Virus record (IMG/VR): IMGVR_UViG_3300034072_002211
Coordinates: 213,445 to 277,444 of that record
DNA length: 64,000 nt
Reading direction: 5' to 3' (one strand)
The notes under the pieces were generated by a model. It was not told the origin of the DNA and did not search any database. It saw only the letters and a program-made list of their open reading frames with translations. Below, piece after piece: positions 39,701-51,641 of this stretch. The first letter of the stretch is position 1. The number at the start of each line of letters is the position of its first letter. The position numbers and the translations under genes were made by a program.

Positions 39701-39796
39701 TGGTAGGGGTGGAGGGATTCGAACCCTCGTCGTCGCCTAATCTGGGCTCTCGCAAGGTATAAGCTTGCCCGCTCTTGACCGCTGAGCTACACCCCC
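39701..39796 (-). tRNA. tRNA-Ile(UAU) with long variable arm
   Basis: Cloverleaf, loop CTTATAC, 23-nt variable arm, encoded CCA. Confidence 0.85.
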
Positions 39797-40189: not shown

Positions 40190-40268
40190 TGGTGGCCGTT
40201 GTGGGGCTCGAACCCACAACTCTCAGGGGTTTAGAATCCCCGGCTCTGCCAGCTTGAGCTAAACGGCC
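40190..40268 (-). tRNA. amber suppressor-type tRNA, anticodon CUA
   Basis: Cloverleaf GGCCGTT/AACGGCC, loop TTCTAAA, CCA. Confidence 0.85.
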
Positions 40269-46939: not shown

Positions 46940-48262
46940 TTATGTGACGCGGACCTTATCGTCAAGATATCGCTGACCCATATCCAACTCACTTAGGTAG
47001 TGGCAGTTGAGCATATAGGGGCGAAGAACCTCTGGAATCATGACGTCATCGGTCGTCTGGTAATTCTCCAGAACCGCAACCAAAGTGCGACCAACCGCCA
47101 AGCCAGAGCCATTTAGCGTGTGGGCGTAGAACGTCTCGCCATTGACCTTATAGCGGGTGTTCATACGACGCGCTTGGAAGTCGCCGCAGTTCGAGACGCT
47201 GCTGATCTCGCGGTAGGTGTTCTGGCCAGGAAGCCAGACCTCGATGTCGTAGGTCTTCTGTGCGCTGAACCCCATGTCGCCCGCGCACAATAGCATCGTG
47301 CGATAGGTCAGGTCCAACTTGGCCAGGATCTGCTCCGCGGCGTTGAGCATATAGTCATGCTCATGAGCACTCTGCGAAGGCTCACAGACAGTCACGAGTT
47401 CGACCTTTTGGAACTGATGCTGTCGGATAAGCCCGCGCGTGTCTCGGCCCGCAGAGCCCGCCTCTGAGCGATAGCAATCGGTGAGAGCCACGTAGCGATG
47501 CCGCCCACCCAAAAGGATCTGATCCGCATGAATGTTAGTCAGGCTGACTTCAGCCGTGGGGATCAGGAACTGAGTGGGTTCACTTGCTCCATCCTCATCA
47601 GCAATACCAAAGAGATCCTCTTTGAACTTGGGCAGTTGCCCCGTTCCGTAAAGAGCTTCCTCGTTGACGATGGTGGGAGGGATGACCTCACGGTAGCCGC
47701 GCTTGATCTGTTCATCCAGCATGAACTGTCCGAGAGCACGATGTAGTCGAGCCACCGGACCCTGAAGCATTGAGAAGCGCGAGCCGCTGATCTTTGCCGC
47801 CGCGTCAAAACCCAGATCGACTTGATCCAGTTCATAATGCGGTGTGCCATCCCTTGCGCCGACCTTGCCCCAGCGACGGACTTCCACGTTACTGGTCTCG
47901 TCCGTGCCATCTGGCACATCAGCCGCAGGCACGTTGGGACACATGATCAGGAATGCCTCGAGCATCTCTTCAGCGTGAGTTGCCTGAGCAGCCCACATTG
48001 TTTCATTTTGCTTGAGAAGCTTCACCAACTCCTTGAGGGCGTCAGCTGAAGCAGTATTACCCTCCTTCATGGCTTTGCCAATTTCCTGACTCTTGGCCTT
48101 GATTAGGCTGCGAGTGTCCTGAAGCCTCGTGAGCGCATCGCTACGGCGGCTTGCGAACTGCTGGATCTTGTCGATGTGGGGATCGTGCCCGCGGCGCTTC
48201 ATAGCAGCCACGAACTCATCCGGCTTAGCCAGGATGCCCTTGACGTCAAAGTGATACTTCAT
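46940..48262 (-). CDS. serS: seryl-tRNA synthetase
   Basis: GTGQLPKF, PTAEV, CYRSEAG, HQFQKVE, YREISS, HTLNGSGLAVGR. Confidence 0.97.
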   Translation of the reverse strand: MKYHFDVKGILAKPDEFVAAMKRRGHDPHIDKIQQFASRRSDALTRLQDTRSLIKAKSQEIGKAMKEGNTASADALKELVKLLKQNETMWAAQATHAEEMLEAFLIMCPNVPAADVPDGTDETSNVEVRRWGKVGARDGTPHYELDQVDLGFDAAAKISGSRFSMLQGPVARLHRALGQFMLDEQIKRGYREVIPPTIVNEEALYGTGQLPKFKEDLFGIADEDGASEPTQFLIPTAEVSLTNIHADQILLGGRHRYVALTDCYRSEAGSAGRDTRGLIRQHQFQKVELVTVCEPSQSAHEHDYMLNAAEQILAKLDLTYRTMLLCAGDMGFSAQKTYDIEVWLPGQNTYREISSVSNCGDFQARRMNTRYKVNGETFYAHTLNGSGLAVGRTLVAVLENYQTTDDVMIPEVLRPYMLNCHYLSELDMGQRYLDDKVRVT

Positions 48263-48339
48263 AGTGCCAGCTTGCTTCCAAATTGGAATAGAGTCAACCA
48301 TTCATGGCGAAGCCCCGGAGCGTCCTCCGGGGCTTGCTC

Positions 48340-48576
48340 TTACTTCACGAAGTTGGGCTGACCTTCCTTCACGGTCCAAGTAAGCTGGATCCAACCCGCT
48401 GGAATGTAGTGCGACTTACCGTCGGCGCTGAAGATCCGATGACCTCCCGAGTCGCTGACGCTGAGCTGCTCGGGGTTCTGAATCTTCACGAAACCCTTGC
48501 TGCCGAAGTTGTAGACGCGTTCAGCCTCGCTGCTGATATCAGTGAACTTGAGGCCGCTTTCATTCTTGAATGCCAT
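48340..48576 (-). CDS. conserved hypothetical phage protein
   Basis: GGAGA RBS; flanked by terminator hairpins. Confidence 0.75.
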   Translation of the reverse strand: MAFKNESGLKFTDISSEAERVYNFGSKGFVKIQNPEQLSVSDSGGHRIFSADGKSHYIPAGWIQLTWTVKEGQPNFVK

Positions 48577-48653
48577 AGTAATCTCCTATTCTAGTAATCC
48601 CGTAGGACACCAGAGTTTAACAGAATAGGAGACTGTGGGTCAGTATTCATGGC

Positions 48654-48683
48654 GAAACCCAGACCGTTTCTGGTCTGGGTCTC
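48654..48683 (-). terminator. terminator hairpin downstream of GOLLD-like RNA
   Basis: GAAACCCAGACC/GGTCTGGGTCTC. Confidence 0.6.
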
Positions 48684-48699
48684 ATAATGTGGTCACCCT

Positions 48700-49735
48700 G
48701 AGAATGTCGGGTGACCGTCCCGGTCTCTGCGGATTATTCCCTGGATCCTACTCCAGGTATTCCCGCTCACTCCATCACCCTTGCGGGTGTAACCGGTCGT
48801 GCCGCCGTTTTTAACGTCAGGCAGTAGACGTGTCACCATATGCTTTTCGACAGTTTCCACCACACCTGCCTTCGGGGCAGTTAAGGCTTGCGGGCCCTAT
48901 ATGGCTTTCTCTATCAACAACGTCTGGATTGGGTACCAGCTCGCCGCCCTAGTTAGCTTGCGCCCCAGGGATTAGGCACTTTCGAGGTTTCCCTCATACA
49001 CATGGCCGAGTCAGGCTTTCCGTTTTTGACAGCAATGTCCAATATGCTATTACCTGCTAGGAGGTAACCCAGAGAGAAGTGCTGACTCAGTAGTTCCAAG
49101 GCCTTTTGAACCTCAGAATGCTACACTCCTCGTATCGTTCGGCTTGCGGGCCTACTAAATCGGTTTACAGGACTTGTCTGGCTTTTTACACCAACCAAAC
49201 CCTTTGACCTGCCATGAGCCCTAGGCGCGACCCTCGGACAACATGACTACCTCTTGCCACTCGATAGTAAACCTGTTTGAGTAGAGGACGCTGGGGTTAC
49301 AAGGCCCCATTCACCGGCCGCTCGTCGCCACCGGGATTATCGTGCTTTCGCACGGCAGTCGTTCTCAGGTCGTCCTACCTACTGCCACTGCTCCTTGGGA
49401 GAGCTTGACAGTCCCTCTTTTGGAGGGCAGGTGAGGATGCGTGTATTGATCCGAACCGAAGCCCGGACGGCTGGGGATGGGTCCCTTCACCACTTACTTG
49501 GGTTACCCCAAGCTACCACCACACGCGGTAATCTCTTGAAACTTTCGAGTCTCCAACTTAACACCGAAGTGTTTCGCCGTCAACTAAAAAGTTTCCGATC
49601 GATCCCTCTGCGGCGCCACACTCCCCTCGACCAGCTATCTCTGCTTCACTTAGACTGAGGATCCTTTCGGAAACCCCAGGCCTTGTTCTGCTCCTGCTGA
49701 CCTTCGAGGTGTGTAGCACCGCGTTGGTCTCATCG
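48700..49735 (-). ncRNA. GOLLD-like giant ornate RNA, ~1030 nt
   Basis: ORF-free; TTGACG promoter at 49757-49762; many GCAA/GAAA/CAAAAG hairpins; 3' motifs CGAAAGTGCCTA, CCGCAAG..TTAA, GACCGGTT, GGAATAATCC match my recollection of GOLLD. Confidence 0.7.
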
Positions 49736-49784: not shown

Positions 49785-49968
49785 AACTTTTTTCTCCTCC
49801 AGGAGAAAACCAGGGTCCATAGACGTTTTGGGCCCCCAAGAGAGTTGAATCTCCTGGGGACCCATCGTGGGAGTTTCCTCCTACGTCCCTCTGCGTCTGC
49901 TCCGGTTCGAGTGTCTGGCTCACGAAGTCCAGCTGACCTTACCTTAGCGTCTGCGTTGGTTCATAACA
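49785..49968 (-). ncRNA. small RNA paralogous to the 5' end of the giant RNA
   Basis: Own TTGACG promoter; four collinear shared blocks. Confidence 0.6.
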
Positions 49969-50034
49969 TCTAGCTTTGCGACCCACAGGACGTCAACAAC
50001 CCTTTTTCAAAGAACTGTGGACAACTCTGTGAGA

Positions 50035-50845
50035 GATGCCATGGGCCCGACACCGAAGTGCCGAGCCCACGAAATGTAATGTGCTTGCCTGTGAAAAACA
50101 AGCTTTACACTGGTGTGTTCACCGAGCCGAGATCAACAGAACGCTGAGGCGCTTGGCCAATGGAACCGTTGTCTTGTGTGGTAGTGGCAGGCGAAGCAAT
50201 GGCGCCGTTGTCGCCGAACAGGAATTTGAATGGTCGGAACAAAAGCTTGCCTTGACCGGACAGCTTGTGGAGCGAGAGTCTAATCATGCTACTATTTATG
50301 CTGATAGGTTTAGAGCTCCTGGAGCCGAAACCCCAGGAGCTCAACCAGTTGACCGAAGTCTCTTGGTATTAGAGTAGGTTTCCAGCATAGGTCCAAAGAC
50401 CACTAAGTTGGTTCCTTGCTCTAACGTCGGTTTAGGGGATAGCTAACCGAAATCAACTATCCCCAACCGACAACAAGCCGAAGCCTGCTGTGGTCTCTGT
50501 GCCAGTGTCTGGAGGTTAGCCGAAGCCACACCATCGCAGTCTTTACACAAAGCCGGTTCTGGGACCCTAGTAGGCCGAAGCTTTCCAGGGTCCCAACCGA
50601 GCAAACCGAAGTTTGCTGGCTTTTGTGTAGGGTTCTGCTGTTGCTATGATCGGGCCCGAAAGCCGTCTCAGGGAGTTCAGCAGTCCTTTCACAAAACTCG
50701 GGTTTAGACCAGCTGGGTGTTCATCCGAAGATTACTAGCGCCAGCTGGTCAACCGATGAAAACCGAAGTCTTCATGGTCTCGAAAGTGTTTTGCCGCTGA
50801 GAACAAAACCGAAGTTCTGCGTCATCATTAGCATCTGCGCTTCCG
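50035..50845 (-). ncRNA. ~800-nt RNA with four tandem UUCG-capped structural repeats
   Basis: About 11 c(UUCG)g or UUUCG hairpins; repeated GGTTG..CTAAACC helix; G-U pairs favour the minus strand. Confidence 0.65.
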
Positions 50846-50911
50846 ATGCTCGCTATGTATGTGACCCGTCCGTGCCGCGCAAGAACTTTTTACAGGACAA
50901 TTACGATTTTG

Positions 50912-50932
50912 TGTGAATAAGATTGTGGATAA
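50912..50932. promoter_or_regulatory. two tandem DnaA boxes
   Basis: TGTGAATAA 50912-50920 and TGTGGATAA 50924-50932; another TTATTCACA at 51303-51311. Confidence 0.5.
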
Positions 50933-50933
50933 C

Positions 50934-51284
50934 TTAGGACGGATCCGTGAAGACCCAGCCTGACTGGCTTGCTCTCTCGACGAGCATTTCGGAGAATCGC
51001 TCCATGACCTCATCTCCGTCCATGTTACAAGGCCAGTGGGCATCAGCATATTCCAGCCCGATAGCATCCATGAGATAGCCGCGCTCATATGTGTCGAGCG
51101 AGGGCGGACCCCATTTGAGAATCAGCGAGCCGCTATAGCCGGTAATGAGAAGACGCATCAGCCGAGGATGCTTCATAATGATCGCTGCGAGCAACGCTCG
51201 ATTGGGCGCGATCAATCCACGCTCTTTGAGGGTGTTGTCACACACCTCCAGGTGCTGGGCGCTCAACGTGGATAATCGCGGCAT
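50934..51284 (-). CDS. hypothetical protein
   Basis: ORF with promoter. Confidence 0.65.
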   Translation of the reverse strand: MPRLSTLSAQHLEVCDNTLKERGLIAPNRALLAAIIMKHPRLMRLLITGYSGSLILKWGPPSLDTYERGYLMDAIGLEYADAHWPCNMDGDEVMERFSEMLVERASQSGWVFTDPS

Positions 51285-51641
51285 CCCTGTTACCTTTTCC
51301 AGTTATTCACAGTTTGTGGTAACATAGGTGGAGAGGCTGTCAACCAGGAATGTCGTCCGGGGCAGGTTGCCCTACCGGCGGCATGGACGGCCATCCTTCC
51401 ACCCCCTCGCGGGCCGGACGTGCTCCCCCGCCGACCCGGGTCGCAAGCGTAATCGGCGGGTTAGATGCTATCTGCTAGAAACCACCGCAACAAAATATGC
51501 GTAAAACCACGTAGCGCGCTCGCAAGGAAACGACCCCGACTTTTTTATCGTCGGGGTCGCCTCTGCAATGGTTCGTTGCTATCTCAGGGAGGTCGGATAG
51601 CAGAAGTGCTATTAAGCGTGACGCGCTTTAGCGTCAAGCGT

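What the first reader, a model, noticed from the sequence alone, without database searches (positions are those of the whole stretch)
50035..50845. Candidate new system: ~800-nt RNA built from four tandem three-helix repeats with UUCG caps
Seen on the minus strand: each unit is a variable long arm, then a UUCG hairpin, then a helix GGTTG..UUCG..C-[UA]-AACC with a 2-nt bulge. The bulged helices lie at 50698-50756, 50554-50599, 50426-50471 and 50307-50346, with spacings 156, 130 and 122 nt. Stem sequences differ between units but keep pairing, which is internal covariation, and G-U pairs fix the strand. There is a TTGCGC-N17-TACATA promoter, a terminal UUCG hairpin and no credible ORF. It lies in tandem with the mini-RNA and GOLLD. 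Inference: a multivalent protein sponge, a scaffold, or a processed array of variable guide or decoy RNAs that matches no family I know.
Basis: partly seen in the sequence, partly recalled or inferred. Interest (0 to 1): 0.9.

Follow-up and report, generated by a model that had tools for sequence, protein, structure and literature searches.

The report
Modular structured RNA beside phage GOLLD
A group of huge bacteriophages encodes a previously undescribed non-coding RNA of about 550 nt, built from three to five similarly folded modules, always just upstream of the cage-forming GOLLD RNA; its function is unknown, but it is real, conserved and matches no known RNA family.

Summary
The core observation holds. 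On the minus strand, 50847-50307 carries four tandem modules of three hairpins each, with 8 CUUCGG in 551 nt (0.2 expected). No Rfam family matches. I found ten distinct arrays in related huge phages (probable Sphingomonadaceae hosts), each upstream of a small RNA and GOLLD. Over 39 modules, 93% of modelled pairs form and 19 of 20 show two-sided changes, far above the controls, with about 10% G-U pairs fixing the strand.

- The repeats span about 540 nt, not 800. The 3' part (50306-50040) is a variable tail with a 60-aa ORF (50105-50287) that evolves like a gene in two relatives and is lost in others.
- The bulged GGUU/AACC helix competes with an equally stable RCC/GGU pairing, and two natural variants favour the latter.
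- The arms are not variable guides. Modules come in fixed order A, B, (optional), C, with invariant internal loops and no complementarity to phage sequence.

Best reading: a new multi-domain scaffold RNA acting with GOLLD and the mini-RNA. The RNA itself is near certain; the mechanism is inferred. Processing into unit RNAs or RNA-only self-assembly remain possible.

The parts
50912..50932 (-). Pair of DnaA-box-like sites (TTATCCACA, TTATTCACA), about 30 nt upstream of the -35 element
   Evidence: This is the only perfect box in the 64-kb window. A box sits at the same relative position in all nine arrays that have upstream sequence.
50854..50882 (-). Promoter: -35 TTGCGC (50882-50877), 17-nt spacer, -10 TACATA (50859-50854)
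   Evidence: Boxes and spacing are conserved while the spacer sequence varies across the arrays. The strict sigma-70 scan did not call it.
50701..50847 (-). Module A: starts with the transcript-start motif AUCGGAAGCG (50847-50838); arm hairpin, RCC 50778-50776, hairpin 2, hairpin 3 at 50754-50701
   Evidence: Model hit of 41.8 bits with R2 and fold. The same start motif heads other transcripts in relatives.
50555..50700 (-). Module B: arm 50700-50621 with invariant internal loop GAACUCCCUG / UCAUAGCAAC; hairpin 3 at 50598-50555
   Evidence: Model hit of 72.2 bits. The arm alignment of ten phages has invariant loops flanked by covarying helices.
50429..50554 (-). Module X: optional third module with a hypervariable arm; hairpin 3 at 50468-50429
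   Evidence: Model hit of 69 bits. The position is shared with L122, L115, L126, L127 and L128, but the arms differ; the module is absent from L003, L006 and L133.
50307..50428 (-). Module C: arm with invariant UUAGUGG / CCUAUG loop; hairpin 3 at 50346-50307
   Evidence: Model hit of 72.8 bits. The arm alignment of nine phages includes a fully compensated closing helix.
50105..50287 (-). Small ORF, 60 aa, no Shine-Dalgarno; lies within the variable 3' tail (50306-50040)
   Evidence: Codon-position bias and an excess of synonymous changes between the L122 and L115 homologues. It is absent or decayed in L126, L127 and L128 and not detected in the other four arrays. No family match.
50043..50068 (-). 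Terminal GC-rich UUCG hairpin, the probable 3' end or terminator of the transcript
   Evidence: Sequence and fold. GC-rich inverted repeats read by eye at a similar position in the L126 and L127 tails (sequences; not folded). No U-tract follows it.
49800..49996 (-). Mini-RNA with its own promoter (TTGACG 49996-49991); its 3' part looks like a solitary, diverged module
   Evidence: Conserved in relatives. Weak R2 hits fall in the mini-RNA of L006, L126 and L127 (19-22 bits).
48655..49735 (-). GOLLD RNA (the Rfam-modelled 3' domain is 48695-49133)
   Evidence: 143.7 bits, E = 7e-39, full model 1-416. A GOLLD match follows nine of the ten arrays; L122 ends at the GOLLD 5' start motif, so there only that start is seen.

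Best explanation
This is a new family of stable, trans-acting, multi-domain non-coding RNA. It is transcribed from its own sigma-70-like promoter at about 50847 and runs through four modules to 50307. In this phage it continues through a variable tail to the hairpin at 50043.

Each module folds on its own into three hairpins: an arm, a short capped hairpin, and a longer hairpin. They are joined by an invariant junction (RCC, GGUUG, CUAAACC). The junction with hairpins 2 and 3 is a common chassis. The arms are module-specific (A, B, C in fixed order, plus optional ones) and carry invariant internal loops, which are the likely contact sites for partners.

The RNA therefore works as a beads-on-a-string platform that presents several different docking surfaces. 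It probably acts in the same pathway as the co-located mini-RNA and the cage-forming GOLLD RNA, within the phage's tRNA and synthetase island.

Shown: transcript strand, modular structure, conservation, genomic linkage. Inferred: that it acts in trans as a scaffold, and what its partners are.
For: - **Structure and strand:**
- **Model generalises:** a covariance model built from 7 units found the other 5 units of the three IMG/VR arrays. It then found the arrays of seven further phages fetched independently of the RNA pattern or by a short junction motif.
- **Ten arrays:** nine are followed by a GOLLD match and the tenth (L122) by the GOLLD 5' start motif at the end of its locus.
- **Fixed module order** A, B, (X), C, with arm-specific invariant loops flanked by covarying helices. 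This pattern is typical of tertiary-contact or ligand sites rather than of base-pairing guides.
- **Hairpin loops** are mostly UUCG-type caps, which are structural.
- **Retained without the ORF:** the array is kept in seven phages that lack an intact small ORF, so it is not merely that gene's leader.
- **Promoter:** conserved boxes with a varying spacer, and a shared transcript-start motif.
- **Context:** GOLLD and ROOL are phage RNAs near tRNA islands that self-assemble into cages and may enclose other molecules (10.1101/2024.12.08.627333, read).
Against: - There are no expression data.
- No partner is identified. The conserved upstream 116-aa protein has a confident but unmatched fold.
- No conserved Watson-Crick partner of the array's motifs exists in the mini-RNA or GOLLD.
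- Module number varies from 3 to 5, which a single rigid fold would tolerate poorly.
- The conserved single-stranded linker CUAAACCGA could equally be a cleavage site.
- GOLLD occurs without the array in L131 and in most known GOLLD loci, so any coupling is not obligatory.
- The family is confined to one phage group.
Confidence: 0.4

Rival explanations
1. Polycistronic precursor. The conserved linker (CUAAACC-GAG) or junction is cut by a host or phage RNase, releasing three to five different small RNAs. Each would consist of a specific arm plus a common handle (hairpins 2 and 3) that gives stability or binds one common protein. This would be analogous to tRNA or CRISPR-type array processing.
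For: - The inter-module linker is conserved beyond what pairing needs, and stays single-stranded in the RCC/GGU conformer.
- Module number and content vary (3-5), as expected for independent units.
- The mini-RNA looks like a free-standing single module with its own promoter.
- Every arm ends in helix plus RCC(A), which resembles a tRNA 3' end, and the array lies in a tRNA-rich region.
Against: - No nuclease gene is found nearby.
- ARAGORN and the Rfam tRNA model find no tRNA-like element in the array.
- The arm closing helices start with U rather than the G typical of RNase P substrates (established knowledge).
- RCCA is more simply explained as the pairing partner of UGGU.
- The fixed A-B-C order suggests the units work together.
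Confidence: 0.25
2. RNA-only higher-order assembly. The modules pack against each other within one chain, or between chains. Alternatively they dock onto GOLLD or the mini-RNA, forming a particle or serving as cage adaptor or cargo.
For: - The array is always next to GOLLD.
- GOLLD and ROOL assemble without protein.
- Conserved nucleotides lie at junctions and internal loops.
- The C-arm loop resembles a tetraloop-receptor-like motif; this rests on memory of the 11-nt receptor and was not tested.
- Two competing junction pairings could allow strand exchange between modules.
Against: - No covarying long-range or intermolecular pairs were found.
- Simple complementarity to GOLLD or the mini-RNA is absent.
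- The variable module number argues against a fixed symmetric particle.
Confidence: 0.15
3. Protein sponge or decoy. The four identical junctions titrate several copies of one host protein, such as an RNase, a defence nuclease or a translation factor.
For: The invariant junction sequence is repeated 3-5 times per RNA. It has a strong promoter-like signal. Phage RNAs that mimic host RNAs are known (established knowledge).
Against: - Known sponges present their motifs in loops, whereas the loops here are inert UUCG caps.
- The module-specific invariant arms would be unnecessary for a simple sponge.
- No candidate protein is identified.
Confidence: 0.12
4. Cis-acting element. It would be either a long structured leader controlling the small ORF, or an antitermination or processing signal for the downstream RNAs.
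For: The ORF starts 20 nt after module C and lacks a Shine-Dalgarno sequence. There is no clear terminator between the array and the ORF.
Against: The ORF is missing or decayed in seven of ten arrays, yet the array is kept. The mini-RNA and GOLLD have their own conserved promoters.
Confidence: 0.05
5. DNA-level element only: a replication origin or protein-binding iterons associated with the DnaA boxes.
For: A cluster of five DnaA-box-like sites lies within 1.3 kb, including the only perfect box in the window. A box is conserved upstream of every array.
Against: - Compensatory changes maintain the hairpins, and about 10% of pairs are G-U, so they pair on one strand only.
- UUCG caps occur on one strand only.
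- TRF finds no DNA-level tandem repeat.
- The boxes lie outside the modules, next to the promoter.
Confidence: 0.03

Closest known systems
GOLLD (RF02032) and ROOL large ornate phage RNAs
   Same: All are large, highly structured non-coding RNAs of unknown function in phages, located in tRNA-rich regions. Conservation is concentrated at junctions and internal loops. The array is physically adjacent to GOLLD in all ten loci.
   Different: There is no sequence or model similarity. This RNA is a chain of 3-5 paralogous modules rather than one non-repetitive fold. It is smaller (about 550 nt) and confined to one phage group. Self-assembly has not been shown.
CsrB/RsmZ-type multi-hairpin sponge RNAs
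   Same: Repeated hairpin units within one transcript, which suggests multivalency.
   Different: Sponges carry the recognition motif (GGA) in the loops of many short hairpins. Here the loops are UUCG caps, the conserved nucleotides sit at helix junctions, and each module has a distinct conserved arm.
ToxI-type (type III) antitoxin RNA repeat arrays, including phage pseudo-ToxI
   Same: A tandem-repeat RNA that could be cut into units; phages are known to encode such arrays.
   Different: ToxI repeats are about 36 nt and near-identical, and lie next to a toxin endoribonuclease gene. Here the units are 122-156 nt and similar only in structure (TRF finds none). No toxin or defence model matches the neighbouring genes.
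Tandem xrRNA and dumbbell modules of flavivirus sfRNAs
   Same: Tandem, paralogous, independently folding multi-helix modules joined by conserved linkers in a viral RNA.
   Different: Those sit in the 3' UTR of an RNA virus and block a 5'-3' exonuclease through a ring-like pseudoknot. No such pseudoknot is evident here, and the setting is a DNA phage.
CRISPR arrays and polycistronic tRNA clusters
   Same: Constant element plus variable element, repeated; located among tRNA genes.
   Different: The 'variable' arms are structured and conserved between phages, so they are not acquired spacers. No tRNA fold is detected, and no cas genes lie near the array.

Membership tests
Any Rfam 15 family | Covariance-model score at or above the gathering threshold, or at least a significant E-value | tested here: not met
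   No hit in 50035-50845 at gathering thresholds or at E <= 10 with permissive filters.
GOLLD (RF02032) | Match to the conserved 3' domain model | tested here: not met
   The GOLLD match is at 48695-49133 only. The array lies about 1.1 kb upstream, behind two further promoters.
tRNA or tRNA-like element | Cloverleaf detected by ARAGORN or the Rfam tRNA model | tested here: not met
   None of the 21 tRNA genes called falls in 50035-50850. The arms fold as rods. Only the helix-plus-RCCA feature resembles a tRNA end.
ToxI-like type III antitoxin array | Near-identical short tandem repeats | tested here: not met
   TRF finds no tandem repeat at minimum score 30. The units share only short junction motifs.
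ToxI-like type III antitoxin array | Adjacent toxin endoribonuclease gene | tested here: not met
   The tested neighbouring ORFs have no PADLOC, Pfam or PHROG nuclease or toxin hit.
CRISPR array | Identical direct repeats separated by unique unstructured spacers, with spacer turnover between relatives | tested here: not met
   Arms B and C are conserved across ten phages and are structured. There is no complementarity to other sequence.
CsrB/RsmZ-type sponge | Recognition motif repeated in hairpin loops | tested here: not met
   Most of the twelve hairpin loops in the window are UUCG-type caps, with 8 exact CUUCGG. The invariant nucleotides lie at junctions and internal loops.
Replication origin / iteron array (DNA element) | Sequence-conserved repeats with no strand-specific RNA pairing constraint | tested here: not met
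   Compensatory changes occur at 19 of 20 pairs, about 10% of cells are G-U, and caps are on one strand only. DnaA boxes exist but lie outside the modules.
Large ornate self-assembling phage RNA (functional class of GOLLD/ROOL) | Protein-free homo-oligomer formation | not testable with these tools
   This needs cryo-EM, SEC-MALS or native gels of in-vitro transcripts.

The most novel reading that the evidence does not exclude
The array, the mini-RNA (a solitary diverged module) and GOLLD form one three-RNA system. The modular RNA would dock onto or inside the GOLLD cage as adaptor or cargo, or itself build an RNA-only particle through exchange between the two competing junction pairings. That would be the first natural hetero-RNA assembly encoded as a gene cluster, and a handle on what GOLLD does.
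Probability: 0.12. Interest if true: 0.95.

Novelty: categorically new. Interest (0 to 1): 0.78.

Why it matters
GOLLD and ROOL are among the largest bacterial and phage RNAs with no known function. Their cage structures raised the question of what they interact with.

This RNA is a conserved, independently transcribed, modular RNA physically linked to GOLLD in ten phages. That makes it a concrete candidate partner to test, for example by co-folding, co-purification or cryo-EM.

It also adds an architecture that neither Rfam 15 nor the papers I searched describe: a chain of paralogous three-hairpin modules with a common junction and specialised arms. The two absolutely conserved internal loops (GAACUCCCUG/UCAWAGCAAC and UUAGUGG/CCUAUG) are defined targets for ligand or protein searches.

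Tried and rejected
- **Phage GenBank records:** blastn of the whole intergenic region found no match.
- **Loose two-unit DNA pattern in IMG/VR:** 108 stretches; apart from the three known contigs, none of the 77 fetched loci held a real unit by the model.
- **First anchor pattern in metagenomes and genomes:** zero hits, because one base differs in relatives and the source samples are not in that collection. The two genome hits of the second pattern were chance.
- **Small ORF as a probe:** only the known copies were found.
- **MAFFT alignment of paralogous units:** misaligned the 3' strands. I replaced it with model-based alignments.
- **Guide or antisense idea:** best complementarity 26.3 bits against a shuffled mean of 26.0.
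- **Docking to the mini-RNA or GOLLD by Watson-Crick pairing:** no conserved partner.
- **Upstream 116-aa protein as nuclease or RNA binder:** no family match, and a confident model with no PDB fold match, best E = 4.4.
- **Defence or toxin models:** none.
- **tRNA-like or RNase P substrate idea:** kept only as a weak lead (see the rivals).
- **Thermodynamics to decide between the two junction pairings:** inconclusive, with each pairing winning in about half the units.
- **One of my regex tables** was unreliable, and I discarded it in favour of direct inspection.

Full report
**Source and setting**

The window is part of IMGVR_UViG_3300034072_002211, a 277-kb contig; the same proteins also occur on a 468-kb contig. 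It carries 21 tRNA genes and a seryl-tRNA synthetase at 46940-48301, so it is a huge phage. The nearest cellular homologues of that synthetase are all Sphingomonadaceae, at 54-56% identity. I infer a host from that family. The finding lies in a 2.6-kb gene-free gap between a 116-aa ORF (50934-51284) and a 78-aa ORF followed by the synthetase, all on the minus strand.

**Checking the observation**

The other three matches in the window fit the chance expectation of 0.8.
- The minus strand folds at z = -12.6 against -5.75 for the plus strand.
- CUUCGG occurs 8 times in 551 nt on the RNA strand (0.21 expected) and never on the opposite strand.
- No Rfam family matches the region, even at E <= 10.
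- GOLLD is real: 48695-49133, 143.7 bits, full model length, just under its gathering score of 150.

**Relatives**

I found ten distinct arrays.

- Flanking genes led to two IMG/VR contigs with the same array (L006/L002 and L003).
- A junction pattern found two more in a different metagenome (L115, L122).
- Synthetase homologues led to L126, L127, L128, L130 and L133, and to L129, which is the same phage as L003 under an NCBI accession.

A covariance model built from 7 units recovered the other 5 units of the first three arrays and then every unit in the new loci. A rebuilt model gives four units in seven arrays, five in L128 and L130, and three in L133.

Nine arrays are followed by a GOLLD match. 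L122 ends at the GOLLD 5' start motif, so only that start is seen there. L131 has GOLLD without an array; L132 and L004 have neither. The array therefore needs this GOLLD neighbourhood, but GOLLD does not need the array.

**Structure**

Each module, folded alone, gives three hairpins: an arm, a short capped hairpin, and a longer hairpin.

On the 39-unit model alignment, 92.7% of cells pair and 19 of 20 pairs show two-sided changes. The covariation score is 0.783, against 0.220 for shuffles (0 of 500 reach it) and at most 0.11 for slid registers. The lower stem of hairpin 3 is paired in 100% of cells, with up to four pair types per position. The alignment was fitted to the model, which favours pairing, but the margin is very large. 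About 10% of cells are G-U, which would be A-C mismatches on the other strand. TRF sees no DNA-level repeat, so the modules are repeats of structure, not of sequence.

**The junction**

RCC before hairpin 2 and GGUUG are present in all 39 units. The 3' CUAAACC is present, with minor variants, in 37. In full-length partition functions each pairing wins in about half the units. Two units have lost the 3' CC but keep perfect AACC/GGUU pairing upstream. The RCC pairing is therefore at least as constrained. Because these nucleotides do not vary otherwise, covariation cannot decide between the two, and a switch between them is possible.

**Modules are not equivalent**

The order is always A, B, (optional X), C, (optional extras).

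- **A** begins with AUCGGAAGCG. This motif also heads mRNA leaders elsewhere in these phages, so it marks a class of transcription starts.
- **B** has the invariant loop GAACUCCCUG / UCAWAGCAAC between covarying helices in all ten phages.
- **C** has the invariant UUAGUGG / CCUAU in nine. Its closing helix is fully compensated between lineages.
- **The third module's arm** is hypervariable.
- **The mini-RNA's 3' part** scores weakly as a module in three phages. It looks like a solitary, diverged module with its own promoter.

**The tail**

In the window, 50306-50040 is not part of the repeats. It holds a 60-aa ORF (50105-50287) without a Shine-Dalgarno sequence. Its homologues in L122 and L115 differ 15/11/32 by codon position, with 23 synonymous against 19 non-synonymous changes, so it evolves as a gene. 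The start codon is lost in L126 and L127, and the ORF is truncated in L128. It is not detected in the remaining four arrays; in L003 and L006 a further module occupies that position. No family matches it. A GC-rich hairpin (50068-50043) ends the unit, and GC-rich inverted repeats can be read at a similar position in the L126 and L127 tails.

**Signals**

The -35 and -10 boxes and their 17-nt spacing are conserved while the spacer sequence varies. The strict scanner missed them. A DnaA-box pair sits about 30 nt upstream of the -35, including the only perfect box in the window, and a box is conserved upstream of all arrays with upstream sequence. This suggests DnaA-linked control of the promoter. 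It does not explain the modules.

**Function**

Tests of specific ideas were negative:

- no antisense targets in the window;
- no conserved Watson-Crick partner in the mini-RNA or GOLLD;
- no nuclease, toxin or defence gene nearby;
- the conserved upstream 116-aa protein has a confident all-helical model with no PDB match.

The literature I searched describes GOLLD and ROOL as cage-forming phage RNAs near tRNA islands, of unknown function, and describes no such modular RNA.

The conservation pattern (inert caps, invariant junctions and internal loops, fixed module order) fits best with a multi-domain scaffold that presents distinct docking sites. I put this at about 0.4. Processing into unit RNAs (0.25), RNA-only assembly with or without GOLLD (0.15) and a protein sponge (0.12) remain open. 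A cis-acting leader (0.05) and a DNA-only element (0.03) are unlikely.

**Verdict**

This is a real, conserved, new RNA family with an unusual modular architecture, tightly linked to GOLLD. That it is a structured RNA is near certain (about 0.95); the mechanism is inferred.

Noticed in passing
window 50912-50932, 50016-50024, 51267-51311: A cluster of DnaA-box-like sites, including the only perfect TTATCCACA in the 64 kb. A box pair sits just upstream of the array promoter, and a box is conserved there in all relatives with upstream sequence. This suggests DnaA-linked promoter control or a nearby origin.
   Followed up: partly
window 49800-49996: The mini-RNA has its own promoter, whose spacer carries a conserved GGGTCGC. 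Its 3' hairpin resembles a diverged array module. Its 5' hairpin shows a compensatory change in L130.
   Followed up: partly
window 50838-50847; L126 ~12415, L127 ~12397, L128 ~9686, L131 ~4415: AUCGGAAGC is a shared transcript-start motif that also heads protein-coding leaders. The mini-RNA and GOLLD share a different start motif, GAGACCAACGC. The phage therefore seems to have at least two promoter or start classes.
   Followed up: partly
window 50105-50287: Small 60-aa ORF without a Shine-Dalgarno sequence, directly after the last module. It evolves as a gene in L122 and L115, is decayed in L126, L127 and L128, and has no known family.
   Followed up: yes
window 50934-51284: A 116-aa protein conserved directly upstream of the array in six phages. 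Its all-helical model is confident (pLDDT 86.6), with no PDB fold match and no family.
   Followed up: yes
window 40190-40268 and 39701-39796: ARAGORN calls a tRNA with a CUA anticodon (labelled Pyl, so a potential amber suppressor) and an unusually long 96-nt tRNA-Ile(UAU). This may hint at stop-codon recoding or an intron.
   Followed up: no
window ~48640-48690 and ~48295-48340: The GC-rich hairpins after GOLLD and after the 78-aa ORF are both followed by the same UUCGCCAUGAAU motif rather than a U-tract. A similar motif is seen in L115. It may be a phage-specific terminator or processing signal.
   Followed up: no
window 48695-49133: GOLLD scores 143.7 bits, just under Rfam's gathering score of 150, so a standard annotation run would miss it. 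L003, L115, L126, L128 and L130 are also sub-threshold.
   Followed up: yes
L128 3346-4884: A PAS-HisKA-receiver hybrid kinase gene is inserted between the mini-RNA and GOLLD in one relative.
   Followed up: no
L132 3668-3864: A group I intron-like match (47.3 bits against a gathering score of 50) in a related phage that has neither GOLLD nor the array.
   Followed up: no
window 46940-48301: The nearest cellular relatives of the phage seryl-tRNA synthetase are all Sphingomonadaceae (54-56% identity), which suggests the host lineage and where the gene came from.
   Followed up: partly
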